IMG/VR virus record: IMGVR_UViG_3300036715_003906
Coordinates: 124,001 to 188,000 of that record
Length of the DNA stretch: 64,000 nucleotides
Reading direction: 5' to 3' (one strand)
The translations under genes were made by a program, and so were the position numbers. The notes below the pieces were generated by a model. That model was not told the origin of the DNA. It saw only the letters and a list, made by a program, of their open reading frames with translations, and searched no databases. Below, piece after piece: positions 1 to 55,416 of this stretch; position 1 is the stretch's first letter, and each line of letters begins with the position of its first letter.

Positions 1-162
1 CTTGCCCATCTTGAGCTGCTTCTTGGCCGACTCGTCGAGGTCGATGAAGCAGTCACGGATGCGCCGGATCGAGGTCTTGCCCCCCTCGGCCATCCGGGCC
101 GAGACGAGGTTCATGGTTCCGATATCGAGGCCCACGCCGGGCCGGTTGAGGTCCTTGCTCAT
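1..162 (-). CDS. Actin-like ATPase (MreB/MamK/FtsA superfamily), N-terminal part; runs off the left edge
   Basis: Not in the ORF track. Manual translation from ATG at 162 gives MSKDLNRPGVGLDIGTMNLVSARMAEGGKTSIRRIRDCFIDLD. GLDIGT matches the actin-fold phosphate-1 motif (DxGT). Confidence 0.65.
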   Translation of the reverse strand, partial: MSKDLNRPGVGLDIGTMNLVSARMAEGGKTSIRRIRDCFIDLDESAKKQLKMGK

Positions 163-37500: not shown

Positions 37501-37943
37501 AAGGAGAGGATGTACTTGCCGTACTGCTCGGGGCTCGTGAAGCCCTCGGGGTGCGAGATGGGCTTCGGGGCCGCCAGTCGCACCTTCGACAACGGCAGCT
37601 CCGTGTGCAGGTCGATCGACTGCGCGACGATGGGCTCGGAGTTGTAGAAGTGCCGGTAGATCTCCCGCTTCTCGCGGAGAGACTGCGGCAGCTCCAGGAA
37701 GTCGGTCGAGAGCTGGGGGGAGAAGAAGGACCCGTTCTGGGCCAGACTCGTGTAGCCGCCCATGCCCCCGGCGTAGTTCGCCGTGCGGGTGTTCCCTGCC
37801 AGACCCTCGCGGCGAGCCCGACGCTCCAGGGGGGTCAGGGGCATCATCTGCACAGGGGACGCCACCCGGGGGTGGTTCCGACGCATGTGGGGGTCGAGGG
37901 CAGCCTGAACGGGCCGGGCCGAGGTGTAAGGGCGTGGGGGCAT
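34569..37943 (-). CDS. Portal protein with an intein
   Basis: Downstream of TerL; R...RHFY...PIV...IDL..ELPLS and YW..GN motifs; C-terminal L.F..L.L.D. GAGGAG RBS. Confidence 0.85.
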   Translation of the reverse strand: MPPRPYTSARPVQAALDPHMRRNHPRVASPVQMMPLTPLERRARREGLAGNTRTANYAGGMGGYTSLAQNGSFFSPQLSTDFLELPQSLREKREIYRHFYNSEPIVAQSIDLHTELPLSKVRLAAPKPISHPEGFTSPEQYGKYILSFFQKMSKKVKLFQRLATIVRHYWLDGNVAIFAEDHQVPLPDDVGYEPKKVRRSVVDEHGAREVDDVERVEKDTREEEEDAYYRKHYKGWDRIIIFPIDQVKVTTFDFSDKMRVELIPSDRDRALIQQAKMGDPIASEMVEEIPAEIRDYIENGHLIPLGDDPDEGSFVHMLSARKGAGDELGQSILDRCHIAGTPVLVKRDGVVRQVHIEDLDPDTDRVLSHTGAWREFEVGVRPVAEEIALLHVAKIEPPVGCTKDHKYPVLRDGSVVELPAEDIRAGDYLQVAQVPLSGSLVGGVDLAEFMHGVEADYRARRSGGTSDLRWEVVDRTTHSFTVRYEKEQTDPRKVGRTNDLNVILEWASTLTEPVAMRSAEVCERFGLHPVTLKEIRSQLVSLGYGVTVAKDKTLNFPPNKSGLKAPTSAAHTKTFPMRVLPLVAGFGYFLGFWLGDGHITKHEGLDYGTLGFTYGPNEPASVKAIQEQIKPMLDVLKVVWSESHAGAGVHMDGYQDALVRWMAANFGHTSEDKHLPAWVFDANKGFLLGLLRGFCDSDGDVVRKKDGSICVRFNGTNHVLMDQIFLLCTSLGIPVSKTKPTKERWVRQANGERAWAKPLHSVHFTHGPSVKTFFESGFLAKRQDPDEWKDGRSGSRHVEHEGKLFYRVQSVSTAMHEGPVYSLNVHEDHSFFAGLSRTSNCLRTLYYREKLRQAQTQIASRAMTPKRIIWADDLSENDVEALRDQVDYALVDPDYSIIVNYELHWEEMGSRDRLLDLSSEYEITERHLRTGLGVTESLLSGETLYSGDRLKLEVINQRYLFLREILQEYVEEYLFKPVARRKGFIELDEWGEEVVLYPSLSFTRLPLRDSQDTFDALFNLYQKGSVSIDVILEMFNIDPHDTRQKLEKDMFTVNDATFNEVTRAIYGEVGRMLAEGSDVKEKIATSLGLTLTPPPAEGEDSNRFASTKPRPKAVPFPPPQSRRA
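35424..36938 (-). mobile_element. Intein (505 aa) with LAGLIDADG homing endonuclease
   Basis: CHIAGTPV (A), CTKDHKY (B), FLGFWLGDG and LLRGFCDSDG (C, E), VYSLNVHEDHSF (F), TSN/C (G). Confidence 0.92.
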
Positions 37944-42308: not shown

Positions 42309-42692
42309 TCAGAGCTTGCGGCCCGCGGGGTCGGCCCCGCCTCCGCCCTCGGTCTGAATCAGGTACTGCGACAGGTTGCGCACCGCGTCGTATCCCTTGT
42401 CCTTGGGGATCTGGTTGCGAATCACCTTCGACAAGTCCTTGCCCGTCTCGGCCAGGTTGCGGACGCCCATCTGGTCGGGCGTCCCCGCAAAGACGTCCTC
42501 GGGACGAACGTCCCGACGACCGGGCGAGACCGTGTCCTTTCGCCGGTCTTCCACGCCTCGGGCGTGCTCCGCGACGATGTCGGGGTCGATGCCCCGGGGC
42601 TTGTTGACCGGGTGGGTCCGGCGCTGGGCCTCCTGGCGGGCCACGGCCGCCGCAAGGGCCCGGGCCGCCAGCCGCTGGGCAAGAGGGGTCAC
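42309..42692 (-). CDS. Hypothetical protein
   Basis: GTGA-coupled start; coding-like. Confidence 0.55.
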   Translation of the reverse strand: MTPLAQRLAARALAAAVARQEAQRRTHPVNKPRGIDPDIVAEHARGVEDRRKDTVSPGRRDVRPEDVFAGTPDQMGVRNLAETGKDLSKVIRNQIPKDKGYDAVRNLSQYLIQTEGGGGADPAGRKL

Positions 42693-44920
42693 AGCTCGAT
42701 CTCCTCGCCCCCGAAGGAGACGTCCACCTGCTCCGCGGTCCGCGTGGGGTCGACGTCCACCCTCATGCCCCGGGGACCGAGGCCGTACTCCGCCATGAGG
42801 GCCAGGCCGCTCTGGGCCACGACCCCCTCGACGGGGTTCTTGGTCGCCGCCCCCGAGGCCAGGATCTCACGCTGCAAGGAGGCCCGTGGGGCGGGGTAGG
42901 GCACCTCTGCCACGAGTTCCTTGCCGAGCACAGAGCACTGACCGAGCGACGACCGGTGAACACAGGTCGCGCACTTCGAGGCCGCCTTGACGTAAGGCAC
43001 CTGACGGGCCCGGTGAATCCGGGCCGCCTCCTTGCACCCCCGCCCGTAGTCCGCGTAGACCGTGGGGTCGATGAAATAGATCCCCTGGAGCCCCTGGTCC
43101 GTGATGGCCGCCCGGAGATCCTCCCGCGCCGCCCGGATGTCCCGGACGTCGTACTGGGCCGTCAGAACCCGCCCGAGGTCCGCGCCGTAGAGCCCCTCGT
43201 TCAAGGACCGCCGGGCCGTCGCCACGATGGCCTGCCGGGTCGGGAGACTGGTCGAGTGCCCGGTCCGGTCCCCGCCCACGAAGGCCGTGTCGATCGCGGT
43301 CCGAGCCGCCGCTTTACCCCCCGTCCCCCGGGCCGCGGACCGGAAGAGGGTCTGGAGGGCCTCGCGGGGCGTGCCCTGGGCCAGCCGCGTGTCCCAGGGG
43401 GCGATGCGGCCGGCCATCTTGTGCTCCATGAAGACCGTCTCGACCATCGCCAGGGTGGTGACGTCCGCCGCCGACCCGACCACCGGCTTGCCGTAAACCA
43501 GGCACCGGCTGAGCTTGTGGTAGATGCAGCCCGCGCACTTCGCCCCCGCCACCACCGCCTTGACCCCGGGGTTGTGGGTGGCGAGGAAGGACGCCCCCTC
43601 ATGGCAGTCGTCGAAGGACGCCTGCGTCGTGTAGAGGACGCCGTAGAGCCCCGCTTCCCGGAGGAGGGGCTGCCAGTGCGCCGCCGTGGCCTGGAGATCC
43701 ACGGGGCTCGCCACCTGGCGCATGATCTCGGACAGCTCGGCCTCGGGACGCCCCTTGAGCATCTCCCGCTGGAGGACCGCCACGATGGGTCGGGCACGGA
43801 TCTCGGAAGCCATGCGCTGGGTCGCCTCGTCCCGCTTCCGGGTGAGGTTCTCCGCTGCCATGAGCTGGCCGTGAACCGTCGTCTGGGACACCTCGGGGGC
43901 CGGGGGCGCCGCCTGGCCCTGACCCACGTAGACCGGACGGAGCACTTCCTGCCCCCCGGCGACCCGCTGACGCACGTCTTCGAGGGCCTCGGCCGTCGTG
44001 GCCGCCGCCGCCAGCCGGAAGGCCGCCTGAGCGTCGAGGACGGGGATGGACCCCGACCGGAGCGCCGCCGCGATCTCCCCCCGGAGGTGGTCCCGCGAGG
44101 CCGTGAGGTCGATGGGGGCCTCGAAAGCCGGCGCCTCCCCCGCCTGACGGATCAGACGCTGGACGTTCTCGACCGGCTTGAAGGAAGCCCGTACAGGCTC
44201 CACCGCCCCCGCGGGGGCGAGGAGGGCCAGACGGATGCGCTCCCGGGGAGCCGACTGGCTTGCCCGTACCTGGCGCCCCTTGGCCGCCTCCATCTGCTCG
44301 ACCTGCTCGGCCAGGGCATCGGTGTAGGGGACCTCGACGACCAGCTCCTTGTGGAAGACCGAGCACGTCTGGGTCCCGGTCGGGAGCTTGTGGGCATGGA
44401 GGCACCCCTCGCACGCCTCCTTGGCCCGGAGAAACCGGGCCGTGGCCGCGTGACGCTTGACGAAGGCCGCCGCCTTGGCGCCGCCCTGGTGGCACCCGGG
44501 GAAGTCCGCCGCGTCCACGAAGTAGGGCCCGAGGAGCCCACGCTCGGCCAGCACCGAACCGAGGGCCGTCCGGGCCGCACGAAGCTGGTTCGGGTCGAAC
44601 CGCTGGGTCAGGGCGTTCTTGATCTTGTCGAGGTCCGTGGTCTGGACGATCAGGAGACGAGCCACCTTCACGATGTCCGCCGGGGCACCCCGCAGGAGCC
44701 CGTGCTCCGGGGAGAGGTCCCCCATGGTCCGCGGGGCCCCTGCGCGGTTGGGGACGTAGGAAGAAGGGGGCTGGTCCTCGTGGGACCAGGCCGCGACGAG
44801 GTCCGGCACGACGTCGAGGTTCTGCTTGGGGAGGCGGTCGAGGTCGCGGTAATCCGCCTCGTCCACATCGAGCCAATCGAGCTTGGCGGGGGTCGTGCTG
44901 AGGAGGTTGCTGATGTCCAT
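42689..44920 (-). CDS. Hypothetical protein with three internal Cys-rich repeats
   Basis: Three copies of GL.G.....C ... C..C.(H/Y)...C.V..K..V. Confidence 0.65.
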   Translation of the reverse strand: MDISNLLSTTPAKLDWLDVDEADYRDLDRLPKQNLDVVPDLVAAWSHEDQPPSSYVPNRAGAPRTMGDLSPEHGLLRGAPADIVKVARLLIVQTTDLDKIKNALTQRFDPNQLRAARTALGSVLAERGLLGPYFVDAADFPGCHQGGAKAAAFVKRHAATARFLRAKEACEGCLHAHKLPTGTQTCSVFHKELVVEVPYTDALAEQVEQMEAAKGRQVRASQSAPRERIRLALLAPAGAVEPVRASFKPVENVQRLIRQAGEAPAFEAPIDLTASRDHLRGEIAAALRSGSIPVLDAQAAFRLAAAATTAEALEDVRQRVAGGQEVLRPVYVGQGQAAPPAPEVSQTTVHGQLMAAENLTRKRDEATQRMASEIRARPIVAVLQREMLKGRPEAELSEIMRQVASPVDLQATAAHWQPLLREAGLYGVLYTTQASFDDCHEGASFLATHNPGVKAVVAGAKCAGCIYHKLSRCLVYGKPVVGSAADVTTLAMVETVFMEHKMAGRIAPWDTRLAQGTPREALQTLFRSAARGTGGKAAARTAIDTAFVGGDRTGHSTSLPTRQAIVATARRSLNEGLYGADLGRVLTAQYDVRDIRAAREDLRAAITDQGLQGIYFIDPTVYADYGRGCKEAARIHRARQVPYVKAASKCATCVHRSSLGQCSVLGKELVAEVPYPAPRASLQREILASGAATKNPVEGVVAQSGLALMAEYGLGPRGMRVDVDPTRTAEQVDVSFGGEEIEL

Positions 44921-47430: not shown

Positions 47431-48123
47431 TCATAGGCGAGCCTGCATAAGTAAAGAACAGCAATCAAGGCCGCGATCGGCCCATTGCGGGAGCTTCACC
47501 TCCCGCAATATATTGAAGTTCTCGCTGATCGCGAAGAAGACCCGGTAGTAGCGCTGGAGAGGCCCCTCCAGCCCCTCCTCGTCGAGCTGCTCCTTCTCCC
47601 GGTCCGCCATCCCCCGTAGGGCCCCGAGGGCCGTGAAGAACCGGTGACGCACCCTCCCCTGCGTCTGGTTCAAGTTCTTGGCCACCTCGCTCTGGCACGT
47701 CGTCTCCCAGATCCCGAGCAGGATCGCGACGTCGATGTCGGGGAAGCCCGCCCGGGCAAGGTCCTCCCGCATCTCGTCCGGATCCACCTGTGGGATCGAC
47801 AGGAGGAACTTGAGCCGCTGGAGCCCCCGGTCGAGGCGGTAGCTCACCGCCGCCTGCGTGATCCCGAAGATGGCCGCGATCTCGGCCTGCTTCTTCCGCA
47901 AGAGGAAGTAGAGGTGGATGAGGTCCGCTTCCCGCTCCGGGATGCGATCGAGCAGGGGCTTGATCTCCTCCTCGTAGCTCGCCGCCTCCAGGAAGGCCCC
48001 AACCTCCGGATCTGCCTCGACGAGCCCCTCCTCCGCCGCCTCCATGAGCCCGTCGGCTAGCAGGTCCCGCGAGGCCAGATGTGCTGGATCAATCGGCGCG
48101 ATGTACTTGGAGCCTCGGGGCAT
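47431..48123 (-). CDS. Sigma-70 region-4-like transcription factor with two HTH domains
   Basis: IPEREADLIHLYF....QAEIAAIFGITQAAVSYRL.R and a second HTH QSEVAKNLNQTQGRVRHRF; no region 2 visible. Confidence 0.75.
   Translation of the reverse strand: MPRGSKYIAPIDPAHLASRDLLADGLMEAAEEGLVEADPEVGAFLEAASYEEEIKPLLDRIPEREADLIHLYFLLRKKQAEIAAIFGITQAAVSYRLDRGLQRLKFLLSIPQVDPDEMREDLARAGFPDIDVAILLGIWETTCQSEVAKNLNQTQGRVRHRFFTALGALRGMADREKEQLDEEGLEGPLQRYYRVFFAISENFNILREVKLPQWADRGLDCCSLLMQARL
47446..47456 (-). promoter_or_regulatory. Best copy of a recurrent T-rich motif (CTTTACTTATG), candidate late promoter
   Basis: Related copies at 19051, 22295, 18160, 37969, 27384, 31643, 34559, 23498 and 15086, each upstream of a structural-gene start. 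Confidence 0.5.
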
Positions 48124-48129
48124 AACACC

Positions 48130-49758
48130 TCAGAACAGGGGAAGCTGGAAGAAGGTCTGGAGGATGCGATCGTGCCGCATCTGGATCTCATCGAGCGCCC
48201 CGAGAACCTTGGCCCGGTCCTGCTGGGGGGGGGTGACCTCCAGCGCGATCGTGGAGATCAGCTCCATGAGCCGCAGGTTGAGCCGAACCTGCCCCTGGGA
48301 TGCCTTCAAGGAAGCATACAGGGCCTTGCTCACCCCGCCAAGGGTCGAACGGTAAACCCCGTCCACGGAGCCGTAAAGCGCGATCAGCTTGGCCGCGGTC
48401 TTCGCCCCACACCCGGGGACCCCAGGAATCTCGTCGCTCTTGTCCCCGGCGAGGGCGCGGTAGGAGACCATCTGGGCCGGCGTGACCCCGTAGACCTCCT
48501 GCACCTTCGCGGGCGTGAACGTGAGGGGGGTGGGGCCCGGGACGAGCACCGTCACCCGCTCGGACACGAGCTGGAGCATGTCGCGATCGGACGAGATCAC
48601 GAGGCAGGGGGCCTCCGTCTCCGCCACCAGCGTCGCGAGGACATCATCGGCCTCCTCGGCGTGGTGCATGGCCTGGGTCACCCCGAGGTCCGGGAGGAAC
48701 TTCTGGAGCCACGTCACCTCCCGGAACACCCCGAGCGATCCCCGGCTCGCCTTGTACCCAGGGAAGAGGGCCCGGCGCCGCCTGCTCGATCCGTCCCACA
48801 CCACCGTGAAGTGCGCCTCGGGCCAGGTCTTCTTCCAGGACGTGAGGGAGTTGAGGAAGCCCACGATGGCCCCCGTGGACCGGCCATTCTTGTCCGTCAG
48901 CTTGTCGAGCCCGGGGGCAGTCGCACAGCGGCACGCCAGGTTGTGGCCATCGATCAGGGCATGCAGTGGGGGGGTCACGGCATCAATCTCCCGTTCCAGG
49001 GTCGCGAGGCGGTCCGCGAGGTCACTCAACCTCGACCAGTGGAAGTACACCTGCTCCAAATCCCGCACCGGAAGATCGGTCTCGAGGGCCACGAAGATCT
49101 GCGCGAGGGGGGTGCCCTTCTCGAACCACCGCCGGAACTTCTCGTACCGGGCGTGGGCCCCCCGGAGAAGCTCGGGCTGGGGCAAGGGAGCGCGGAGGAT
49201 CTCGGACCCCCGCAGGACATCCCGGAGAAGGGGCGTCATGCGGTCCACGAAGGGCGGGGGCGCCACCTTCTCGACCAGCCGCAGAAAGGACCGGGGGAGC
49301 GTGACCAGGGCCTCCTTCGACCGCAGCTTGATATGCACCTGGACCTCGGCCCCGAGGTCCGCGATGACGGACGCCCGCAGGTTCCGGTACGGGCCCGAGG
49401 TCACGTCCACCATGTCCCCCGACTCGATCCCCTGGTCCTCCACCGCCCGGATCTGGGCCCGGAAGCGATCGATCTCGGCGTCGCTCACGAGGGCGAGCTT
49501 CCCCGGGGAGACGATGACGGGCCCCTCGACGTACTTCGTGTCGTTCAGCCGCCGGTAGCGCTCATCGGGGTAGTCCCGGCGCACGAAGACGTACCCTTCG
49601 AGGAGCCATGTCACGACCCGGTCCGTCCCCGACTGGGTCACCGACGCCGGCAAGAAGACCTCGGCGTCGCGCAGGTAGTGCCGGATGCTGGCCCGGATGA
49701 TCTCCGGAGCCTCCCCCTCGGCCCGAGGGCTCAGATTCAGGACCACCCACGAGGCCAT
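48130..49758 (-). CDS. Fusion: NusG/RfaH-like (NGN+KOW) domain + PolA-type 5'-3' exonuclease (FEN)
   Basis: N-terminal W.VL...F.P...L.GYVFV and GDMVDVTSGPY.N (KOW). C-terminal LIDGHN, VVWDG, R..LFPGYKA.R, EADD, SSDRDMLQL, GDKSDEIPGVPGCGAKTA (H3TH). Start ATG 49758 (TGATG overlap). Confidence 0.85.
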   Translation of the reverse strand: MASWVVLNLSPRAEGEAPEIIRASIRHYLRDAEVFLPASVTQSGTDRVVTWLLEGYVFVRRDYPDERYRRLNDTKYVEGPVIVSPGKLALVSDAEIDRFRAQIRAVEDQGIESGDMVDVTSGPYRNLRASVIADLGAEVQVHIKLRSKEALVTLPRSFLRLVEKVAPPPFVDRMTPLLRDVLRGSEILRAPLPQPELLRGAHARYEKFRRWFEKGTPLAQIFVALETDLPVRDLEQVYFHWSRLSDLADRLATLEREIDAVTPPLHALIDGHNLACRCATAPGLDKLTDKNGRSTGAIVGFLNSLTSWKKTWPEAHFTVVWDGSSRRRRALFPGYKASRGSLGVFREVTWLQKFLPDLGVTQAMHHAEEADDVLATLVAETEAPCLVISSDRDMLQLVSERVTVLVPGPTPLTFTPAKVQEVYGVTPAQMVSYRALAGDKSDEIPGVPGCGAKTAAKLIALYGSVDGVYRSTLGGVSKALYASLKASQGQVRLNLRLMELISTIALEVTPPQQDRAKVLGALDEIQMRHDRILQTFFQLPLF

Positions 49759-51236
49759 CAGCGGTTCCGCCAGAACTGGGCAAAGGCCGCCTGCCACGCC
49801 GCCGGGGACAGCACCTCGGTATCCTCGGCCGGCCCGAAGCGGAGGGCCTGCGGAGGAGCCGTCGCCCCCCGCGGGAGAACCTGGGAGATGACCTTGTGAT
49901 CGAACTCCGTGAGGGCGAGGTCGTCCTGCCCGAGCGGACCCACGCCGTCCGCCCGGACATCGGGCCCCTGTGCTCGTGGTTGCGGACGGGAGGGATCCGG
50001 CCGAGCTGCTGGAGGGGGGGCCAGAGGCGCCACGGGAACCGGAGCCGGGGGCGCCACGGGAACCGGAGCCGGGGGCGCCACGGGAACCGGAGCCGGGGGC
50101 GCGGGCGGGGGAGACGGGGCCGGCGACGCCACGGGGGCCGGGAGGGCGGCCTGGGGCGCCTGGGGCACCGCCACGACCTGCACGGGAGCCGGGACGCCCG
50201 ACGGGCTACCGCCCCCCAGGGCGAGGACATCGCAGAGGAGCGAGGACCTTGTCGGCTGGGGACGGGCGAGGAAGAACTCGGCGAGGCGGAGGGTGGTGAG
50301 CCCGAAGAGGGCGTAGACCTGCTCACCCTTGGGCCTGTCCAGGAAAGCAAAGTCAGAGGTCATCTTGTGCGCCTGACGATAGCTGTTCATGGCCGCCTCC
50401 GCGAGTCCCGCCGCGATCGCCTCGGGGGGAGCCTGCTCCGCGGCCTTCTCGACCAGGTCGAGGGCCCGGGGCAGGTCGCCGAGGGAGAGGAGGATGTCGT
50501 AGTAGGTCGTGACGAGCTGGAGGGAGAGATGCTCCCGGACCGTGTCGAGGTCGATCTTTCCGAGCTGCGCCAGCATCTCCAGGTGCTTGAGGATGTCGCG
50601 GACGTGACCCCCAGCGTGGTCGATGACCGTGAGGACCGCGTCCTCCTCGTAGTCTGCCCCCTCGGCGTCGAGGACGTAGCGCATCCGGGCGTAGAGGGCG
50701 TCCCGGGGCACCCGACGGATCGCGTACTCCTCGCACCGGGACCGGATCGTCCCCTTGATCTTGGCGGGCTCCGTGGTGCAGAAGATGCCCACCATGCGGC
50801 GCTCTTCGAGGGGCTTGAGGAGCACATCCTGTGCCCCGATCCCCATCCGCTGGGCCTCGTCGAAGAGGTAGACCCTCCGCGTGGACCCGAGCACCGTGAA
50901 GGGCAGATCATCGACGATGCCGCGGATCACATCGACGGTGCCATGGGAGGCCGCGTCGAGTTCGTGGAAGGCCCCGGGCTGCTCGTTGAGCACGGCCAGG
51001 CAGTTGTTGCACTCGTTGCAGGGCTCAGGGTTTGCCCGGTCGAGCTGAAGGCAGAGAGCCGCCCGGGCCAGGATGCGCCCGAAGGTCGTCTTCCCCTGCC
51101 CGTGGCCCCCCGAGAAGAGGTAGCTCGTGTCGAGAGCCGTGCCCTCGGCGAGCCGCCTCTGGACCAGCGTCACGGCCCCCTCTTGTCCAAGGATGTCCGC
51201 GAACTTGAGAGGGCGGTAACGCTGATCCCACGCCAT
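49758..51236 (-). CDS. dnaX: DNA polymerase III clamp loader gamma/tau
   Basis: YRP..F.DI.GQ, Walker A GHGQGKTT, PCNECNNC Zn motif, ELDAAS, DEA, LLKPLEE, TIRSRC. Confidence 0.9.
   Translation of the reverse strand: MAWDQRYRPLKFADILGQEGAVTLVQRRLAEGTALDTSYLFSGGHGQGKTTFGRILARAALCLQLDRANPEPCNECNNCLAVLNEQPGAFHELDAASHGTVDVIRGIVDDLPFTVLGSTRRVYLFDEAQRMGIGAQDVLLKPLEERRMVGIFCTTEPAKIKGTIRSRCEEYAIRRVPRDALYARMRYVLDAEGADYEEDAVLTVIDHAGGHVRDILKHLEMLAQLGKIDLDTVREHLSLQLVTTYYDILLSLGDLPRALDLVEKAAEQAPPEAIAAGLAEAAMNSYRQAHKMTSDFAFLDRPKGEQVYALFGLTTLRLAEFFLARPQPTRSSLLCDVLALGGGSPSGVPAPVQVVAVPQAPQAALPAPVASPAPSPPPAPPAPVPVAPPAPVPVAPPAPVPVAPLAPPPAARPDPSRPQPRAQGPDVRADGVGPLGQDDLALTEFDHKVISQVLPRGATAPPQALRFGPAEDTEVLSPAAWQAAFAQFWRNR
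50026..50097. repeat. 24-nt coding tandem repeat x3 (PAPVPVAP) in the DnaX linker
   Basis: GGCGCCACGGGAACCGGAGCCGGG x3, perfect. Confidence 0.9.
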
Positions 51237-51724
51237 CAGACGTCCCCGGAGCCCTGCGTCGTCATCGCGACCGTCGTGGCCGTCGTAGCCACATCGGTCT
51301 CGATCATCTTCGAGACCGTGACGAAGTCGTTGAGGCCCTCCTGCCAGACGCCGTGCCGCCGCAGGATCGACGTGAACTCCTGCACGTCAGGGGACCGGAC
51401 AGCGTACTTCATCTCCCCCGTCTTCTCGTCCTCCTCCCCGCCGCAGTGCTCCAGCAGGTGATCGAGGGCCGCCTGCCGGCCCTCGCCATCAAGTTCGTTG
51501 AAGTGGTCGAGGGCGACCGTGATGATGAAGTCGCAGTCGAGGAGGAACTTGAGGTCGTCCCCGCACTTCTTGACCTTCCCGAACACGGGCCGGCCATTCT
51601 TGACCGCGCCCTTGTCGACCCACAGGTAGCGGATCTTGGCCTCCGCCAGATGCGGGTGGAACGTCGAGATGAGCGACGAGGCCAGGGTTTGGACGGTCTC
51701 GGCGTCGCTATAGATCTTTGCCAT
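51236..51724 (-). CDS. Putative phage metallopeptidase-family protein
   Basis: H.HL..AKI.YL...GK.KK...DF.I.V...F......Q.A.LDHLLEHC...R.PDVQEF..I.RRHG; start ATG 51724 with GGAAG. Confidence 0.65.
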   Translation of the reverse strand: MAKIYSDAETVQTLASSLISTFHPHLAEAKIRYLWVDKGAVKNGRPVFGKVKKCGDDLKFLLDCDFIITVALDHFNELDGEGRQAALDHLLEHCGGEEDEKTGEMKYAVRSPDVQEFTSILRRHGVWQEGLNDFVTVSKMIETDVATTATTVAMTTQGSGDV

Positions 51725-52433
51725 TGGCTTCCTTGACGGTGTGGTGGACGAAATCCCGCAGGGGGTCGTCCCCCCATGCTTCCCAAAGCTCCCCCGGGTC
51801 CTTGATCGGTCGGTCCTTGCCGAACGGCTGAACCCGCGGGTAGGTGACGATACGGACGTCGAAATCACGGCCGTAGGTCTGACGGAAAGATTCCGCTGCC
51901 TGCCGGCCGGTCGAGTCCATATCGTAGCCGATGTACACCGTCCCCACGAGCCGACGCAACTGCCGGAGCATCGCGTCCGTGATCCGCACGGACAGGACCG
52001 GCAAGGTCGCGGGGAAGTGCCGGGCCAAGGGGAGGCAGTCGAAGACGCCCTCGACAAGCCACACGGCCCGGGTCTCCCACATGCCCGCCGCCGCCTGGGC
52101 GAGTCCGAAGGTCACCGCCTCCGCCTCCTTCCCGTGGAAGAACTCCCGATACCTCCCCCCGGGGGCCAGTGACCGAAACTGAAACCCGAACACCTCCCCG
52201 AGCACGTTCGTCAGGGGGAAGACCAGGACGTTATCGATCGACCCCCCGTCCTTCAGCCACTCGTAAAAGGGGGCGGCCCCGAGGACCGGAAGGGCCGGGA
52301 CCTCCCCCCGGAGAACCCCGATGCGGAAGAGGTCGATCTGCTCGTCGGTGACTCCGCGCCCGGTGAGGTAGTCGCAGGCGTCGTCGTCGAGCTGGTCGTG
52401 AGCGAAGGAGACGATGGTATCGAGGTAGGACAC
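51708..52433 (-). CDS. DNA primase (DnaG-type core, TOPRIM; no N-terminal Zn finger)
   Basis: YL..RG.......F.IG, LVFPL.N..G.V.GF..R, WLVEG.FD, YD.D..G. Confidence 0.85.
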   Translation of the reverse strand: MSYLDTIVSFAHDQLDDDACDYLTGRGVTDEQIDLFRIGVLRGEVPALPVLGAAPFYEWLKDGGSIDNVLVFPLTNVLGEVFGFQFRSLAPGGRYREFFHGKEAEAVTFGLAQAAAGMWETRAVWLVEGVFDCLPLARHFPATLPVLSVRITDAMLRQLRRLVGTVYIGYDMDSTGRQAAESFRQTYGRDFDVRIVTYPRVQPFGKDRPIKDPGELWEAWGDDPLRDFVHHTVKEANGKDL

Positions 52434-53513: not shown

Positions 53514-54181
53514 GAGGCACCCCGTAGCCTGCGGAGCGCCAAATGCCAAGCTCCGTCCTCGGTCCCCTCGGTCGACGCCGCGTAGGCGTGGTCCGTGTGG
53601 TCGAGGAGCGCCTGCTTGTGGGTGACGAGCAGGATCATCACCCCCGTGCTCTTCGCCAGGTGCTGGAGAAACCGGCCCGTCGCGTCCAGGTACTCATCGC
53701 TCACCGCCCCGAGGGTCTCGTCGAGGAGGAGCAGCGGGAACCGCCCGAGCCGCAGCAGGGTGAGCAGGCGCAGGGTGAGCGAGGCCAGGCTGCACGGCCC
53801 TCCCCCGAAGGCTTGCAAGGGCTCGTCCCGGATCACGATGCCGCCCTCCTCCCCTTGCCGGAAGAAGAAGTCGATGCTGAGCCGCCCGCGCTTCTCCCCG
53901 ACCTCGGCCTCGAAGGCCAGGCGCTGGTCAGGGAAAATGGTGGTCAGCCCCTCGCTGACCAGCCCCTCGATCACCTTCACCTGATCCAAGACCAGCCGGT
54001 CGAGGAGCAGGCGATACAGCTCCCCCACCTTGGTGAGCACCTCGACCCGGTGGTCAAGGGCCCGGACTTCCTCCCGGCTCTCGCGGAGCTGGCGGACCGT
54101 CTGGTCTCGCGCGGCCCCCAATCTAGCCGCACGCTGCCGCAAAACGGACAGACGAGAGGTGCGGTCCCAGGCGGTGGTCAT
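53510..54181 (-). CDS. SbcC/Rad50-type ABC ATPase, C-terminal half
   Basis: Coiled coil, then signature-like FGGG, Walker B LLLLDE and H-loop LVTH; no Walker A. ATGA-coupled start 54181. Confidence 0.85.
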   Translation of the reverse strand: MTTAWDRTSRLSVLRQRAARLGAARDQTVRQLRESREEVRALDHRVEVLTKVGELYRLLLDRLVLDQVKVIEGLVSEGLTTIFPDQRLAFEAEVGEKRGRLSIDFFFRQGEEGGIVIRDEPLQAFGGGPCSLASLTLRLLTLLRLGRFPLLLLDETLGAVSDEYLDATGRFLQHLAKSTGVMILLVTHKQALLDHTDHAYAASTEGTEDGAWHLALRRLRGAS

Positions 54182-55416
54182 TCCATCGACGGAAGAAATC
54201 GTGTCACTCGGCATCGAGAAGCCCCTTCGGGCAAGATCTCTACACCGGAACCCCCGACAATCTTACCCTCGGGGGACAGCACGAACTCGTCCACGGTCCG
54301 CAGCATCACCAGGCCCCGCGGCCGGGCCTCGCTCGGGGCTACCATGTAGGCCCGCACTTCCAGCTCGTTCCCCCGAATCCCCGTGAAGAGTTCGAGCAGG
54401 TGGTCGAGGTTGAACGACGCCGACCAGGCCGCGTGGTCCGTGCCCATCTCGACGGGGACCGGGAAGGAGGTGACCTTCTCCGTCCCCCCCGCGGCCCCGA
54501 AAGTCATCTGCTTGCCCTCGGCGTCGTACTGGACCCGAACCTTGGTCCGCTTGTCCATCTCGCTGCGGACGTACTTGAGGGCGTGCAGGACGGGGGACGC
54601 CGCCACCTTCGCCACCCACACGTCCTGGTCGAGACTGTAGTAGCTGAACGCCTCGTGCTTCTTCGCCGAGTGGGCCCAGCCGAGCACGCGCCCCTGCTCA
54701 TCGGAGAGGAAGGTCATCGAGGCGCCGTCCCGTACCGTGACCGTCTGGCCCGCTTTGCCGAGGAAGGCCAGGACCATGGACAGGTGCTGGCTGTGGACGT
54801 GGAGACCCTTGTCGTAGAGCGCGTCCGACCGGAAGAACATGGCCAGCGTCCCGTTGGCGGCGTAGACGTACCCGTTGGCCTTCTCGCCCGGGGTGACCTT
54901 GCCGTCGAAGAGCTGTACCCCACGGAGCGCCTCGTTGACGATCTTGTCCCCCGGCTCGGGGAGGAAGGCCCGCGCCTGGGAGAACGCTTCCCGGAGGAGC
55001 GCCGCAGGGAAGGTCCGCTCCCCCACGGCCGCGTCAAGGTCGCGGTCCAGCGGCGCCAGGAGACGGGGGTCGAAGGTCGACCGCTCCGCCCCCGCCCCCG
55101 TGCCGGTCGAGTAGGCGACCCGGTGGGCCTCCCCCTCGGCCGTCGCCGTGAGCGTCACCATCTCGTCGCCGAGGTAGCCGAAGGAGGAGGTGTGCTTCGC
55201 CGGGTAGATGAAGCTCCCCTCCCCCTCCACATCGGTGATGGGCACCGACGCCCGGGCCGCGTGGGTGTTGTCCCGCGAGTAGACGTGAAGCGTCTCCCCC
55301 CGGACCACGAAGAGATACCCCGCGCCCCCCTGCCCCACCGGGCGAGGAGGAACGATGGCCACCGACGCGAGAGCCCCCACAAGGGCCGCCGCCTGCACCA
55401 CGAACTTGATCATCAT
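54178..55416 (-). CDS. DNA polymerase III beta sliding clamp-like protein
   Basis: ~410 aa, three repeated beta-alpha domains; C-terminal SFNLDHLLE.F..I.....V pattern; next to DnaX and primase. Confidence 0.7.
   Translation of the reverse strand: MMIKFVVQAAALVGALASVAIVPPRPVGQGGAGYLFVVRGETLHVYSRDNTHAARASVPITDVEGEGSFIYPAKHTSSFGYLGDEMVTLTATAEGEAHRVAYSTGTGAGAERSTFDPRLLAPLDRDLDAAVGERTFPAALLREAFSQARAFLPEPGDKIVNEALRGVQLFDGKVTPGEKANGYVYAANGTLAMFFRSDALYDKGLHVHSQHLSMVLAFLGKAGQTVTVRDGASMTFLSDEQGRVLGWAHSAKKHEAFSYYSLDQDVWVAKVAASPVLHALKYVRSEMDKRTKVRVQYDAEGKQMTFGAAGGTEKVTSFPVPVEMGTDHAAWSASFNLDHLLELFTGIRGNELEVRAYMVAPSEARPRGLVMLRTVDEFVLSPEGKIVGGSGVEILPEGASRCRVTRFLPSME

What the first reader, a model, noticed from the sequence alone, without database searches (positions are those of the whole stretch)
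48130..49758. NusG-family elongation factor fused to a flap/5'-3' exonuclease
Seen: a complete NGN+KOW (about residues 1-165), a helical linker and a complete FEN domain in one uninterrupted ORF, flanked by dnaX and the sigma4 gene. Known: T5 D15 flap endonuclease is needed for late transcription, and T4 couples late transcription to the sliding clamp. Inference: a physical tether coupling replication or primer/R-loop processing to RNAP. I do not recognise this domain architecture from characterised proteins.
Basis: partly seen in the sequence, partly recalled or inferred. Interest (0 to 1): 0.7.

Follow-up and report, generated by a model that had tools for sequence, protein, structure and literature searches.

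The report
NusG–flap nuclease fusion in megaphages

Summary
Window 48130-49758 (minus strand) is one 542-aa ORF with four parts: NusG NGN, KOW, a helical spacer and a Pol I-type 5' nuclease (FEN) with every catalytic carboxylate intact.

The window lies in a 251-kb virus record that is about half of a roughly 0.4-0.5 Mb phage.

The fusion is not an assembly error or a lost stop:
- More than 120 homologues (38-66% identity) have the same single ORF.
- An independent freshwater assembly has it without indels.
- The spacer is 3-6 degenerate ~36-residue helical repeats, not read-through sequence.

In sister lineages the same cassette (primase-dnaX-NGN/KOW-FEN-sigma4) carries NGN/KOW and FEN as two genes with overlapping stop and start. 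The fusion is therefore most simply read as derived, probably once, though the trees do not root the direction.

Complete relatives encode one FEN, one NGN-KOW, a beta clamp and a clamp loader, but no recognisable RNAP.

RNAP binding is likely. The NusG signature motifs are kept, the co-fold with E. coli beta' scores 0.56 against 0.01 for controls (weak support), and related NGN-KOW modules are fused to sigma factors.

My best reading (about 0.45) is a nuclease tethered to RNAP that couples transcription to replication. The main rival is two independent functions joined by chance. No description was found in the literature.

The parts
49438..49758 (-). NGN domain (residues 1-107) of the NusG-FEN protein. 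It contains the invariant W4 and the L52-x-x-G55-Y56-x-F58 motif, which aligns with the NusG 'FPGYVFV' strand.
   Evidence: Pfam PF02357 28.2 bits against cut-off 22.2; invariant columns; HMMER alignments to solved NusG; AF2 and Foldseek.
49270..49425 (-). KOW domain (residues 112-163), a five-stranded barrel with the G-D-x-V-x-V-x-S-G-P-Y motif.
   Evidence: KOW Pfam hit in 16 of 30 family members; profile hits to NusG KOW 1nz9, 2mi6 and Spt5 KOW; AF2 strands 116-163.
48964..49269 (-). Helical spacer (residues 164-265). This protein has three long helices. Across the family the spacer is 3-6 degenerate ~36-residue repeats with R-L-x-x-W-like motifs, and spacer length clusters at about 110, 146 and 182-195 aa.
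   Evidence: AF2 helices 169-188, 195-224 and 231-260 at pLDDT 56-72; spacer lengths and ~36-residue spacing of W; no Pfam family.
48487..48957 (-). FEN catalytic domain (5'-3' exonuclease N-terminal PIN-like domain, residues 268-424). D270, D322, E369, D371, D372, D391 and D393 are invariant.
   Evidence: PF02739 99 bits; invariant columns in 30 sequences; PDB profile Pol I 6vde 6.9e-51 and FenA 6c33 6e-32; Foldseek.
48223..48486 (-). FEN helix-hairpin-helix (H3TH/SAM-fold) DNA-binding domain (residues 425-512), with invariant G438, D439, S441, D442 and I444-P445.
   Evidence: PF01367 75.2 bits; invariant columns.
48133..48222 (-). C-terminal helix carrying the conserved I-L-x-x-F-F, followed by a disordered 5-residue tail QLPLF (48133-47). 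The tail is a near-consensus beta-clamp-binding pentapeptide (QL[SD]LF).
   Evidence: Sequence; pLDDT 38 for the last residues; a Q-[LAM]-x-[LIM]-[FLTSI] tail in 9 of 124 fused homologues against 0.1% per interior 10-aa window; consensus as quoted in PMC12867686.
49758..51236 (-). Upstream gene: DnaX-like clamp-loader ATPase. Its stop overlaps the NusG-FEN ATG by 1 nt.
   Evidence: PF13177 79.4 bits and phrog_5846 177.5 bits; junction sequence.
47431..48123 (-). Downstream gene: 230-aa protein with sigma-70 region 4 (res 57-105) and a second HTH-like segment. It always follows FEN in this cassette, and on one contig it is fused to it (P0011).
   Evidence: PF04545 52.9 bits; synteny; P0011 in alignment A1 and on contig L173.
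54178..55416 (-). Phage-encoded divergent beta sliding clamp, in the same conserved gene block.
   Evidence: Profile hit to T. maritima DnaN 1vpk 1.4e-6; AF2 pLDDT 90.4 and pTM 0.87; Foldseek to DnaN structures, E 3e-20, TM 0.72-0.81; weak phrog_947 processivity factor.
51708..52433 (-). Toprim-type primase, the upstream member of the conserved block. The phage metallopeptidase gene at 51236-51700 lies between it and dnaX.
   Evidence: Toprim_2 39.4 bits, phrog_47 66 bits, PhageMetallopep 89.2 bits; synteny.

Best explanation
The gene encodes a NusG-family elongation factor whose cargo is covalently attached: a catalytically competent Pol I-type 5' nuclease.

**Shown**
- The four-part architecture is real.
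- It is conserved across a diverse clade of ~0.4-0.5 Mb uncultivated phages.
- The FEN is the only FEN in complete genomes, and the NGN-KOW the only NGN-KOW.
- These phages have no recognisable RNA polymerase of their own, but do encode a beta clamp and a clamp loader in the same gene block.
- The gene order dnaX, NGN/KOW, FEN, sigma4 predates the fusion.

**Inferred mechanism**
- The NGN docks on the clamp helices of the host RNAP elongation complex, as in NusG, RfaH and Spt5.
- The repeat spacer of variable length holds the FEN within reach of the DNA around the transcription complex.
- There the FEN removes RNA-DNA hybrid ends and 5' flaps that arise where transcription and replication meet on a genome with long co-directional gene arrays. 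Examples are R-loops, transcripts used as primers after co-directional collisions, and nicks or gaps.
- The NGN-KOW part may also make RNAP processive across gene arrays longer than 38 kb.
- In this particular phage the C-terminal QLPLF tail may also hook the nuclease to the phage's beta clamp.
For: **Architecture and conservation.**

**Not an artefact.** Independent assembly without indels. 279 relatives in the protein search, with the 120 listed nearly all full-length fusions. At least 52 fused cluster representatives among the top 150 NGN-KOW hits. An ESM Atlas cluster of 161 members, all viral.

**Partnership older than the fusion.** NGN/KOW and FEN are separate genes with a 4-nt stop/start overlap in the same cassette in L104, L106 and L118. 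They are adjacent in L102, L166, L167 and L170.

**Single origin.**
- In the FEN tree, fused forms are one side of a branch (73/99), and NusG-linked FENs group against other FENs (86/88).
- In the NGN-KOW tree, the stand-alone and split clade is separated from all fused forms (94/99).

**The spacer is a selected structure, not read-through.** Its length is quantised in ~36-aa repeats, whereas the split genes overlap and leave no intergenic sequence to read through.

**RNAP link.**
- NusG signature motifs are invariant.
- Co-fold with E. coli beta' 1-420: ipSAE 0.56, 0.59 and 0.48 against a best control of 0.01. The tool's verdict is 'weak support'; in its calibration the mark was reached by 58 of 80 solved complexes and 2 of 110 mismatches; the runs agree in at least 90% of contacts; partner pLDDT is at least 78.
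- The same NGN-KOW module is fused to a full sigma70-family factor in P0176, nested inside the fused clade.
- It is fused to sigma4 in P0011, and is directly followed by a sigma4-like gene where FEN is absent (L168).

**Host RNAP dependence.** No beta' catalytic domain in four complete relatives and a fifth about 87% complete.

**Sole FEN and sole NGN-KOW per genome.**

**Replisome context.** Beta clamp, clamp loader and primase.

**Co-directional arrays.**

**Precedents for an RNAP-associated 5' nuclease and for clamp-coupled transcription.** Spt5-Xrn2 (PMC11695829); T4 and Mu (PMC2988020, PMC7892883, PMC12867686). T4 itself places its FEN-family rnh gene directly upstream of the late-transcription genes dsbA and 33.
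Against: - No experiment, transcriptome or interaction data exist for any member, and the lineage is uncultivated. The only GenBank phage hit is an unannotated metagenomic record.
- The co-fold is only 'weak support', used E. coli beta' because the host is unknown, and may reflect memory of solved NusG complexes.
- The whole ~15-gene block is syntenic, so adjacency of NGN/KOW and FEN is not by itself specific evidence of a joint function.
- The split state in sister lineages shows that a covalent tether is not required.
- The spacer is modelled with low confidence (pLDDT 56-72) and may be an inert linker that lets two independent activities coexist.
- As the only FEN in the genome it must presumably also serve ordinary Okazaki maturation away from RNAP.
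- The clamp-binding-like tail occurs in only 9 of 124 fused homologues.
Confidence: 0.45

Rival explanations
1. Two independent functions on one chain. The NGN-KOW half is a phage antiterminator or processivity factor for the long late operons. The FEN half is simply the replisome's Okazaki-primer nuclease. Two adjacent, translationally coupled genes became fused in one lineage, and the spacer only keeps them from interfering with each other. There is no mechanistic coupling of nuclease and RNAP.
For: - The split arrangement in sister lineages shows each half works as a separate protein.
- The whole block is syntenic, so adjacency may be historical.
- The spacer has low model confidence and no detectable family.
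- The FEN is the only one in the genome and sits with primase, clamp and clamp loader.
- Stand-alone phage NusG-like proteins are common: 59 of the top 150 representatives, plus BFVD entries named NusG or RfaH.
Against: - The fusion needed more than a lost stop. A repeat spacer of 100-235 aa with conserved motifs and quantised length was acquired and has been kept across 38-66% sequence divergence, with little sign of reversion. One ~170-aa form, P0207, groups inside the fused clade and was not followed up.
- In split lineages the two genes keep stop/start overlap, which implies coupled, roughly equimolar synthesis.
- FEN sits between two transcription-factor genes (NGN/KOW and sigma4) rather than with the clamp or primase genes, and T4 shows the same FEN-to-late-factor gene order.
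Confidence: 0.3
2. An RNAP-to-sliding-clamp bridge for replication-coupled late transcription, analogous to T4 gp33/gp55-gp45 and to Mu MuC-beta clamp. The NGN binds RNAP. The FEN domain and C-terminal tail bind the phage beta clamp, which the adjacent DnaX loader places at nicks or flaps that the nuclease itself creates or trims. The neighbouring sigma4 protein supplies promoter and flap-tip contacts.
For: - The phage encodes its own beta clamp and clamp loader in the same block.
- The C-terminal QLPLF differs from the QL[SD]LF consensus only at position 3.
- Such tails are about 70-fold enriched at the C-terminus of fused homologues.
- The sigma4-only gene is always next, and a separate Sigma70_r2 protein lies elsewhere in the genome, reminiscent of split gp55/gp33.
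- T4 gene order is rnh-dsbA-33.
- Clamp-activated transcription is established in T4 and Mu (PMC2988020, PMC7892883, PMC12867686).
Against: - Only 9 of 124 fused homologues carry a recognisable clamp-binding-like tail. The conserved I-L-x-x-F-F is modelled as part of the folded FEN domain.
- NusG-family factors act in elongation, whereas the T4 and Mu mechanisms act at initiation.
- All catalytic residues are conserved, so the FEN is not a mere adaptor.
Confidence: 0.13
3. The NGN-KOW module has been re-purposed and no longer binds RNAP. It anchors the FEN to a replisome or recombination partner instead.
For: - Position inside a replication gene block next to dnaX.
- Pfam NGN scores are modest: 28 bits here, and at most E 0.01 in only 5 of 30 members.
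- The co-fold is only weak support.
Against: - Invariant NusG signature motifs, and full-length profile alignment to NusG from many bacteria and to Spt5.
- Co-fold far above controls (0.56 against 0.01).
- The same module is fused to sigma factors and HTH domains and paired with sigma4-like genes even without FEN.
Confidence: 0.07
4. Artefact: an assembly chimera, or a sequencing error that removed a stop codon between two genes.
For: The split arrangement exists in relatives.
Against: - More than 120 fused homologues from JGI, ENA, NCBI and Logan assemblies.
- An independent contig with 32 substitutions and no indels across the junctions.
- High third-position GC throughout the ORF (0.90).
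- The spacer of about 100 aa has no counterpart in split loci.
Confidence: 0.01

Closest known systems
Bacterial NusG and its specialised paralogues (RfaH, LoaP, UpxY, ActX/TaA class)
   Same: - NGN plus a single KOW in the same order.
- Conserved W in strand 1 and the G-Y-x-F strand.
- Profile and fold matches to NusG and RfaH bound to RNAP.
- Like the paralogues, it is encoded by a mobile element with very long operons.
   Different: - The known members end after the KOW and recruit partners (Rho, S10, NusA) non-covalently.
- This protein continues into a repeat spacer and an enzyme.
- No ops-like recruitment site, fold-switching or effect on elongation has been examined.
Pol I-type 5' nucleases / FEN (Pol I N-terminal domain, M. 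smegmatis FenA, E. coli ExoIX, T5 D15, T4 RNase H)
   Same: - PF02739 plus PF01367.
- All metal-binding carboxylates and the H3TH motif are present.
- Best structural matches are FenA and the Taq and M. smegmatis Pol I 5' domains.
- It is the sole such gene in the phage genome, next to replication genes.
   Different: Known members are stand-alone or fused to a DNA polymerase. None is fused to a transcription factor.
Spt5 (DSIF)-Xrn2 pre-termination complex on RNA polymerase II (PMC11695829)
   Same: A NusG/Spt5-family factor on the polymerase works with a 5'-3' nuclease, and engagement with the polymerase controls the nuclease.
   Different: - Non-covalent and eukaryotic.
- Xrn2 is a single-strand RNA exonuclease acting as a terminator, whereas the FEN here has a duplex-binding H3TH and is a structure-specific nuclease.
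- The relationship is an analogy only.
Clamp-coupled late transcription of T4 (gp45/gp33/gp55) and Mu (MuC-beta clamp)
   Same: - The phage uses host RNAP and encodes a clamp and clamp loader.
- An RNAP-directed factor carries a clamp-binding-like C-terminal tail (in this phage).
- A sigma4-type factor is encoded next door.
- T4 has the same FEN-to-late-factor gene order (rnh-dsbA-33).
   Different: - T4 and Mu factors act at promoters and are not NusG-like.
- The T4 clamp is gp45-type, not beta-type.
- The clamp-binding tail is not general in this family.
Stand-alone phage NusG-like proteins of the same cassette (e.g. L104, L106, L118, L166, L167, L170)
   Same: Homologous NGN-KOW (23-32% identity), with the same position between dnaX and FEN and the same downstream sigma4 gene.
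   Different: Two polypeptides with overlapping stop and start, and no repeat spacer.

Membership tests
NusG/Spt5 family | NGN domain (alpha/beta fold with the conserved hydrophobic strand motif) | tested here: met
   PF02357 28.2 bits against cut-off 22.2. The NGN-KOW profile hits NusG of T. maritima (1.4e-11), A. aeolicus, M. tuberculosis and E. coli (1.3e-6, full length). Foldseek finds 6gov_G and 8phk_P. Invariant W4, G55, Y56, F58.
NusG/Spt5 family | C-terminal KOW beta-barrel following the NGN | tested here: met
   KOW Pfam hit in 16 of 30 members. Profile hits to isolated NusG KOW structures 1nz9 and 2mi6 and to Spt5 KOW. AF2 strands 116-163 at pLDDT about 90.
NusG/Spt5 family | NGN binds the RNAP largest-subunit clamp helices | tested here: inconclusive
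   Co-fold with E. coli beta' 1-420: ipSAE 0.56 (runs 0.56, 0.59, 0.48) against a best control of 0.01. The tool's verdict is 'weak support'. In calibration the mark was reached by 58 of 80 solved complexes and 2 of 110 mismatches. No interface was reported. The host RNAP is unknown.
NusG/Spt5 family | Modulates pausing, termination or processivity of transcription | not testable with these tools
   Needs in vitro transcription or infection experiments.
RfaH-type specialised paralogue | Sequence-specific recruitment (ops-like non-template DNA element) and autoinhibited, fold-switching KOW | not tested
   No search for a recruitment element was made. The AF2 model shows the KOW as a beta-barrel.
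FEN / 5'-3' exonuclease family (Pol I N-terminal domain type) | PIN-like catalytic domain plus H3TH domain | tested here: met
   PF02739 99 bits and PF01367 75 bits. PDB profile 6vde 6.9e-51 and 6c33 6e-32. Foldseek FenA 1.6e-19, target TM 0.78.
FEN / 5'-3' exonuclease family (Pol I N-terminal domain type) | Conserved acidic residues for the two metal sites | tested here: met
   D270, D322, E369, D371, D372, D391, D393, D439 and D442 are invariant in 30 diverse homologues.
FEN / 5'-3' exonuclease family (Pol I N-terminal domain type) | Structure-specific 5' nuclease activity | not testable with these tools
   Needs nuclease assays on flap, nick, RNA-DNA and R-loop substrates.
Beta-clamp client proteins | Clamp-binding motif QL[SD]LF, usually at a terminus | tested here: inconclusive
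   The window protein ends in QLPLF in a disordered tail. Similar tails occur in 9 of 124 fused homologues against 0.1% background.
Clamp-activated late transcription systems (T4/Mu type) | Phage- or host-supplied sliding clamp and loader, plus an RNAP-bound factor that contacts the clamp | tested here: inconclusive
   The clamp and the loader are present in the same block. Contact between the RNAP-bound factor and the clamp is only suggested by the tail motif.
Clamp-activated late transcription systems (T4/Mu type) | Late transcription depends on replication or on nicked DNA | not testable with these tools
   Needs infection or a reconstituted system.

The most novel reading that the evidence does not exclude
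The NusG-FEN protein would be the elongation-phase link of a replication-coupled transcription system in giant phages. Its NGN rides host RNAP. Its nuclease and C-terminal tail engage the phage's own beta clamp at nicks and flaps. Together with the adjacent sigma4-only factor, and a separate sigma2-type protein, it would make expression of the very long late gene arrays depend on ongoing replication and stay physically attached to it. This would be a NusG-based counterpart of T4 gp33/gp55/gp45 in which the coupling protein is itself an enzyme that makes or clears the clamp-loading sites.
Probability: 0.13. Interest if true: 0.85.

Novelty: new variant of a known kind. Interest (0 to 1): 0.66.

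Why it matters
NusG/Spt5 is the only transcription factor family conserved in all cellular life. Its working principle is that the NGN anchors to RNAP while the C-terminal domain recruits a partner. In this case the partner is written into the same polypeptide, and it is a DNA-replication nuclease.

If the tether is functional, it gives a simple, purifiable handle on how transcription and replication are coordinated on one template. This covers R-loop and primer removal, co-directional collisions and clamp loading. The setting is phages whose 0.4-0.5 Mb genomes are transcribed by host RNAP in long one-directional arrays.

The wider family is fused to FEN, to sigma factors, to HTH domains and to unknown domains. 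It therefore looks like a phage toolkit for delivering cargo to RNAP, and that would be of practical interest as well.

If the rival reading is right, the finding is still a clean, datable example of fusion of two coupled genes with invention of a repeat spacer.

Tried and rejected
- **Phage-encoded RNAP.** A weak PF04997 hit in the window's genome (11 bits) lies in an 1178-aa ORF that is a UvrD-type helicase. No beta' catalytic domain was found in four complete relatives and a fifth about 87% complete. I therefore dropped the idea that the NGN serves a phage RNAP.
- **The conserved C-terminal I-L-x-x-F-F as a PIP-like clamp motif.** AF2 models it as a confident helix of the FEN fold. Only the extreme tail is treated as a candidate motif.
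- **Spacer homology.**
  - No Pfam family was found for the spacer.
  - Weak profile hits to leucine-rich-repeat proteins (E 1e-5 to 1e-2) probably reflect the L/R/W-rich repeats.
  - There is no similarity to the C-terminal extensions of other NGN-KOW proteins.
- **Replicative polymerase of the lineage.** No DnaE or PolB was found by Pfam. PolA was not searched.
- **Promoter and terminator scan of 40-60 kb.** No excess over shuffles, so it is uninformative.
- **T5 D15 and late transcription.** The claim was not found in the papers held. It rests on older literature that I could not check.
- **Cultured relatives.** None. tblastn against 50,697 GenBank phage records gives FEN-only matches. The single NGN-KOW match is the unannotated metagenomic record LR745208.1.
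- **Host identity.** Not determined. The two GTDB hits (a Parcubacteria MAG on a 2.8-kb contig, and a Lysinibacter MAG on a 127-kb contig with the full phage cassette) look like binned phage contigs.
Full report
**1. What is there**

Window 48130-49758 (minus strand) is one open reading frame.
- The ATG at 49758 overlaps the TGA of the upstream dnaX-like gene by one base. It is the start supported by the N-termini of all homologues. The GTG at 49797 is unlikely to be used.
- The stop at 48130-48132 is followed 6 nt later by the ATG of a sigma-70 region-4 protein. The three genes therefore form a tightly packed, probably translationally coupled unit.

Pfam finds three domains:

| Domain | Bits | Residues |
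|---|---|---|
| NusG NGN | 28.2 (curated cut-off 22.2) | 3-100 |
| 5_3_exonuc_N | 99 | 268-424 |
| 5_3_exonuc | 75 | 425-512 |

- PHROGs agrees, giving 'transcription antiterminator' and 'exonuclease'.
- The KOW is not hit in this sequence but is hit in 16 of 30 relatives.
- A profile of the NGN-KOW region matches solved NusG proteins over their full length. T. maritima scores 1.4e-11, and E. coli NusG scores 1.3e-6 with positions 2-163 aligned to residues 7-177. It also matches isolated KOW domains and Spt5.
- The AlphaFold model (mean pLDDT 87.4, pTM 0.55) shows NGN 1-107, a KOW barrel 112-163, three long helices 169-260 at pLDDT 56-72, and FEN 266-537.
- Foldseek finds M. smegmatis FenA (E 1.6e-19), ExoIX, the Taq and M. 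smegmatis Pol I 5' domains and T5 FEN for the C-terminal half. For the N-terminal half it finds NusG and RfaH bound to RNAP (6gov_G, 6tqn_G, 8phk_P).
- All FEN metal-binding carboxylates (D270, D322, E369, D371, D372, D391, D393, D439, D442) and the H3TH motif are invariant in 30 diverse homologues. So are W4 and the G55-Y56-x-F58 strand, which HMMER aligns with the 'FPGYVFV' strand of NusG.

**2. Where it comes from**

- The window is positions 124001-188000 of a 251,474-bp IMG/VR virus record. CheckV rates it 53% complete, and GC is about 68%.
- Related records with direct terminal repeats are 398-437 kb, and one classed as a provirus is 529 kb. This is a lineage of 'huge' phages known only from metagenomes.
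- Runs that hold this sequence are microbial mat, sediment and freshwater metagenomes.
- The gene sits in a block conserved in order in about 25 loci: beta clamp, ATPase, a 198-aa ORF, primase, metallopeptidase, DnaX, NGN/KOW-FEN, sigma4, an Ig-like protein, an 87-aa ORF, a 446-aa ORF, a 743-aa ORF, then terminase and portal.
- The 412-aa ORF at 54178-55416 is a divergent beta sliding clamp.
- From about 24 kb to 62 kb of the window, nearly every called gene lies on the minus strand.

**3. Is the fusion real?**

Yes.
- The 5.8-billion-protein search returns 279 relatives. The 120 listed are nearly all full-length fusions. Their E-values are at most 1.8e-108 and their BLAST identities 37-61%. 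Lengths run from 542 to 690 aa, with P0011 at 840 aa. They come from JGI, ENA, NCBI and Logan assemblies.
- JGI's pipeline labels many of them '5'-3' exonuclease/transcription antitermination factor NusG'. The two halves have therefore been seen by automatic annotation but not discussed.
- The ESM Atlas holds a 161-member cluster, all viral.
- A Logan contig from a different study (X4, freshwater) spans 48075-49608 with 32 substitutions and no indels. The 28 listed substitutions in the ORF are 15 synonymous and 13 conservative-looking replacements, with no stop.

**4. Fused and split forms**

- In a more distant set of phages with the same cassette, the two halves are separate genes. In L104/L105, L106 and L118 the NGN/KOW gene (179-182 aa) ends 4 nt inside the start of the FEN gene (313-322 aa). 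In L102 they are 43 nt apart.
- Three further contigs, reached from stand-alone NGN-KOW proteins, show the same order: dnaX, NGN/KOW (170-171 aa), FEN, sigma4 (L166, L167, L170).
- A profile search of 1.84 billion cluster representatives finds 1325 NGN-KOW relatives at E up to 0.001. Among the best 150, at least 52 are FEN fusions and 59 are stand-alone proteins of about 165-235 aa. The rest are truncated or carry other cargo.
- In the FEN tree the fused forms are one side of a branch (73/99), and the NusG-linked FENs group together against other phage and bacterial FENs (86/88).
- In the NGN-KOW tree the split and stand-alone forms make a clade (94/99) separate from all FEN-fused forms.
- The simplest reading is one fusion event in a lineage where the two genes were already neighbours and co-translated. 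The trees alone do not root the direction. I infer that the split state is ancestral because stand-alone forms are much more widespread.

**5. The spacer**

- The fusion was not a simple loss of a stop, because split genes overlap and leave nothing between them to read through.
- The fused proteins have 100-235 extra residues between KOW and FEN. Spacer lengths cluster at about 110, 146 and 182-195 aa, and tryptophans recur about every 36 residues within R-L-x-x-W-like motifs.
- The spacer is therefore an array of 3-6 degenerate helical repeats.
- The window's protein has the short, three-helix version. It is nested among longer ones, so it probably lost repeats.
- No family or fold match was found for the spacer.

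**6. Evidence that the NGN-KOW still works on RNAP**

- (a) The family signatures are invariant (section 1).
- (b) A co-fold of the NGN-KOW alignment with E. coli beta' residues 1-420 scored ipSAE 0.56, 0.59 and 0.48, against 0.00-0.01 for three controls.
  - The tool calls this 'weak support'. In its calibration the mark was reached by 58 of 80 solved complexes and 2 of 110 mismatches, and scores of 0.60 or less are often wrong unless the guess was likely beforehand.
  - The runs agree in at least 90% of contacts and partner pLDDT is at least 78.
  - The prior is high for a NusG-family NGN, but memory of solved complexes cannot be excluded.
- (c) Complete relatives have no recognisable beta' catalytic domain, so transcription must use host RNAP. 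The window's genome encodes a Sigma70_r2 protein and the sigma4 protein.
- (d) Domain shuffling points the same way.
  - P0176 is a full sigma-70-family factor (regions 2 and 4) fused upstream of an NGN-KOW that nests inside the FEN-fused clade next to P0107 (99/90).
  - P0011 is NGN-KOW-FEN read on into the sigma4 protein. It is seen on one 6-kb contig only.
  - In L168 an NGN-KOW gene is followed directly by a sigma4-like homologue with no FEN between them (BLASTP 5e-6).
  - Other members carry an HTH or an unknown C-terminal domain.
  - The module behaves like an RNAP anchor that phages combine with different cargo.

**7. What the FEN is for**

- Each complete genome has exactly one FEN and one NGN-KOW.
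- The FEN is of the Pol I 5'-nuclease type with a duplex-binding H3TH. It is therefore a structure-specific nuclease for flaps, nicks and RNA-primed ends, not a single-strand RNA exonuclease.
- As the only such enzyme encoded, it presumably matures Okazaki fragments.
- In this phage the protein ends in QLPLF. This is one position off the beta-clamp-binding consensus QL[SD]LF quoted in PMC12867686, and it sits in a disordered tail.
- Similar tails occur in 9 of 124 fused homologues, in four sub-lineages, against 0.1% per interior 10-residue window. This is suggestive but not general.

**8. Most likely mechanism**

My commitment is about 0.45.
- The NGN anchors the nuclease on elongating host RNAP.
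- The repeat spacer sets the reach.
- The FEN trims RNA-DNA and flap structures where transcription and replication share the template.
- The NGN-KOW may also confer processivity on very long, one-directional gene arrays.

Shown: the architecture, its conservation, the older gene partnership, the sole-FEN status, the absence of a phage RNAP, and the presence of a clamp and loader.

Inferred: RNAP binding, targeting of the nuclease, and the substrates.

Rivals:
- Two independent functions on one chain (about 0.30).
- An RNAP-to-clamp bridge for replication-coupled late transcription in the manner of T4 and Mu (about 0.13).
- A re-purposed NGN that no longer binds RNAP (about 0.07).
- Artefact (about 0.01 or less).

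One parallel is worth recording. T4 places its FEN-family rnh gene immediately upstream of, and on the same strand as, the late-transcription genes dsbA and 33. Gene 33 encodes the connector between clamp and late sigma. This mirrors the FEN-to-sigma4 order seen here.

**9. Comparison with what is known**

- The protein meets the sequence and fold criteria of both the NusG family and the Pol I-type FEN family. RNAP binding is only weakly supported in silico, and activity is untested.
- The nearest functional analogy is Spt5 stimulating the 5'-3' nuclease Xrn2 on Pol II (PMC11695829). That interaction is non-covalent and involves a different kind of nuclease.
- Nothing on a NusG-nuclease fusion was found:
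  - in full-text searches;
  - in the NusG review PMC7819879;
  - in the huge-phage survey PMC7162821.
- The databases tell the same story:
  - BFVD has no viral protein with both modules.
  - One unnamed AlphaFold DB cluster representative (A0A6N7Q201, 755 aa) aligns over residues 4-536. The architecture is thus present, unnamed, in UniProt.

**10. Verdict**

This is a real, widespread and apparently undescribed variant of the NusG family with an enzymatic cargo, found in a lineage of giant phages. Interest is 0.66. Novelty: new variant of a known kind.

Noticed in passing
L172:3612-5237 (protein P0176, 541 aa): A full sigma-70-family factor (Pfam regions 2 and 4) is fused through a Pro/Lys-rich repeat to an NGN-KOW module at residues ~326-493. 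That module nests inside the FEN-fused clade. Sigma region 2 and NusG are known (from my own knowledge) to use the same site on the RNAP clamp helices, so a sigma-NusG fusion is odd in its own right.
   Followed up: partly
L173:934-3456 (protein P0011, 840 aa): A triple fusion: NGN-KOW, spacer and FEN are read on into the sigma4 protein as one ORF. It is seen on a single 6-kb JGI contig, so it could be real or a sequencing error.
   Followed up: partly
window 54178-55416 (-): A divergent phage beta sliding clamp that Pfam does not detect (PF00712 finds nothing in the genome). It is clear from profile and fold evidence (DnaN structures, E 3e-20). It heads the conserved replication block.
   Followed up: yes
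window 34569-37943 (-) and 27328-30093 (-): Two large ORFs carry intein signatures. The portal-like protein has LAGLIDADG and intein-splicing hits, and a 921-aa protein of unknown function has Hint-domain hits.
   Followed up: no
window 1-162 (-), continuing upstream to G000:C1:123155: A 335-aa ORF matches Pfam Volactin at 224.7 bits over its full length. To my knowledge Volactin is an actin-like family described from archaea. An actin-like cytoskeletal protein in a giant phage deserves a look.
   Followed up: no
window 42689-44920 (-): A conserved 743-aa protein with three internal repeats rich in Cys-x-x-C pairs; its segments match one another in tblastn. It has no Pfam or PHROG family. It always lies in the block between sigma4 and terminase.
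   Followed up: no
window ~49980-50110 (-), C-terminal third of dnaX: A Pro/Ala-rich tandem peptide repeat (A-P-P-A-P-V-P-V, three copies) lies in the clamp-loader C-terminal region. Assembly contigs break and word depth rises around 49758-50150 in three runs.
   Followed up: no
window 47793-47923 and 49758-49888: In three metagenome runs the summed contig word depth jumps to 40-64x over these two ~130-nt bins, against 2-9x around them, and there are loose ends. The first bin is the sigma4 HTH. Probably short stretches shared with other abundant relatives in the samples.
   Followed up: no
L165:2445-3305 (-) = G000:C1:217944-218804: A 286-aa protein has only a Sigma70_r2 match (27.7 bits). Together with the sigma4-only protein at window 47431-48123, this may be a sigma factor split into two polypeptides, as in T4 gp55/gp33.
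   Followed up: partly
L174 (T4 NC_000866 149193-150704): T4 has rnh (FEN-family RNase H), dsbA and gene 33 contiguous on one strand. A 5' nuclease gene thus lies directly upstream of late-transcription factors, the same order as FEN-to-sigma4 here.
   Followed up: partly
proteins P0185, P0196; P0184, P0190, P0208, P0215, P0232: Other cargo on the same phage NGN-KOW module: a C-terminal XRE-like HTH (P0185, P0196), and a ~150-220-aa domain of unknown function with a recurring Y-x-F-R-N-Q-R-E-G motif.
   Followed up: no
L003 (Lysinibacter sp. MAG, 127-kb contig) and L002 (Parcubacteria MAG, 2.8-kb contig): These are the only two GTDB genomes with the full fusion. L003 carries the whole phage cassette. 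They look like phage contigs binned into MAGs rather than cellular genes, but L003 could be a host clue.
   Followed up: no
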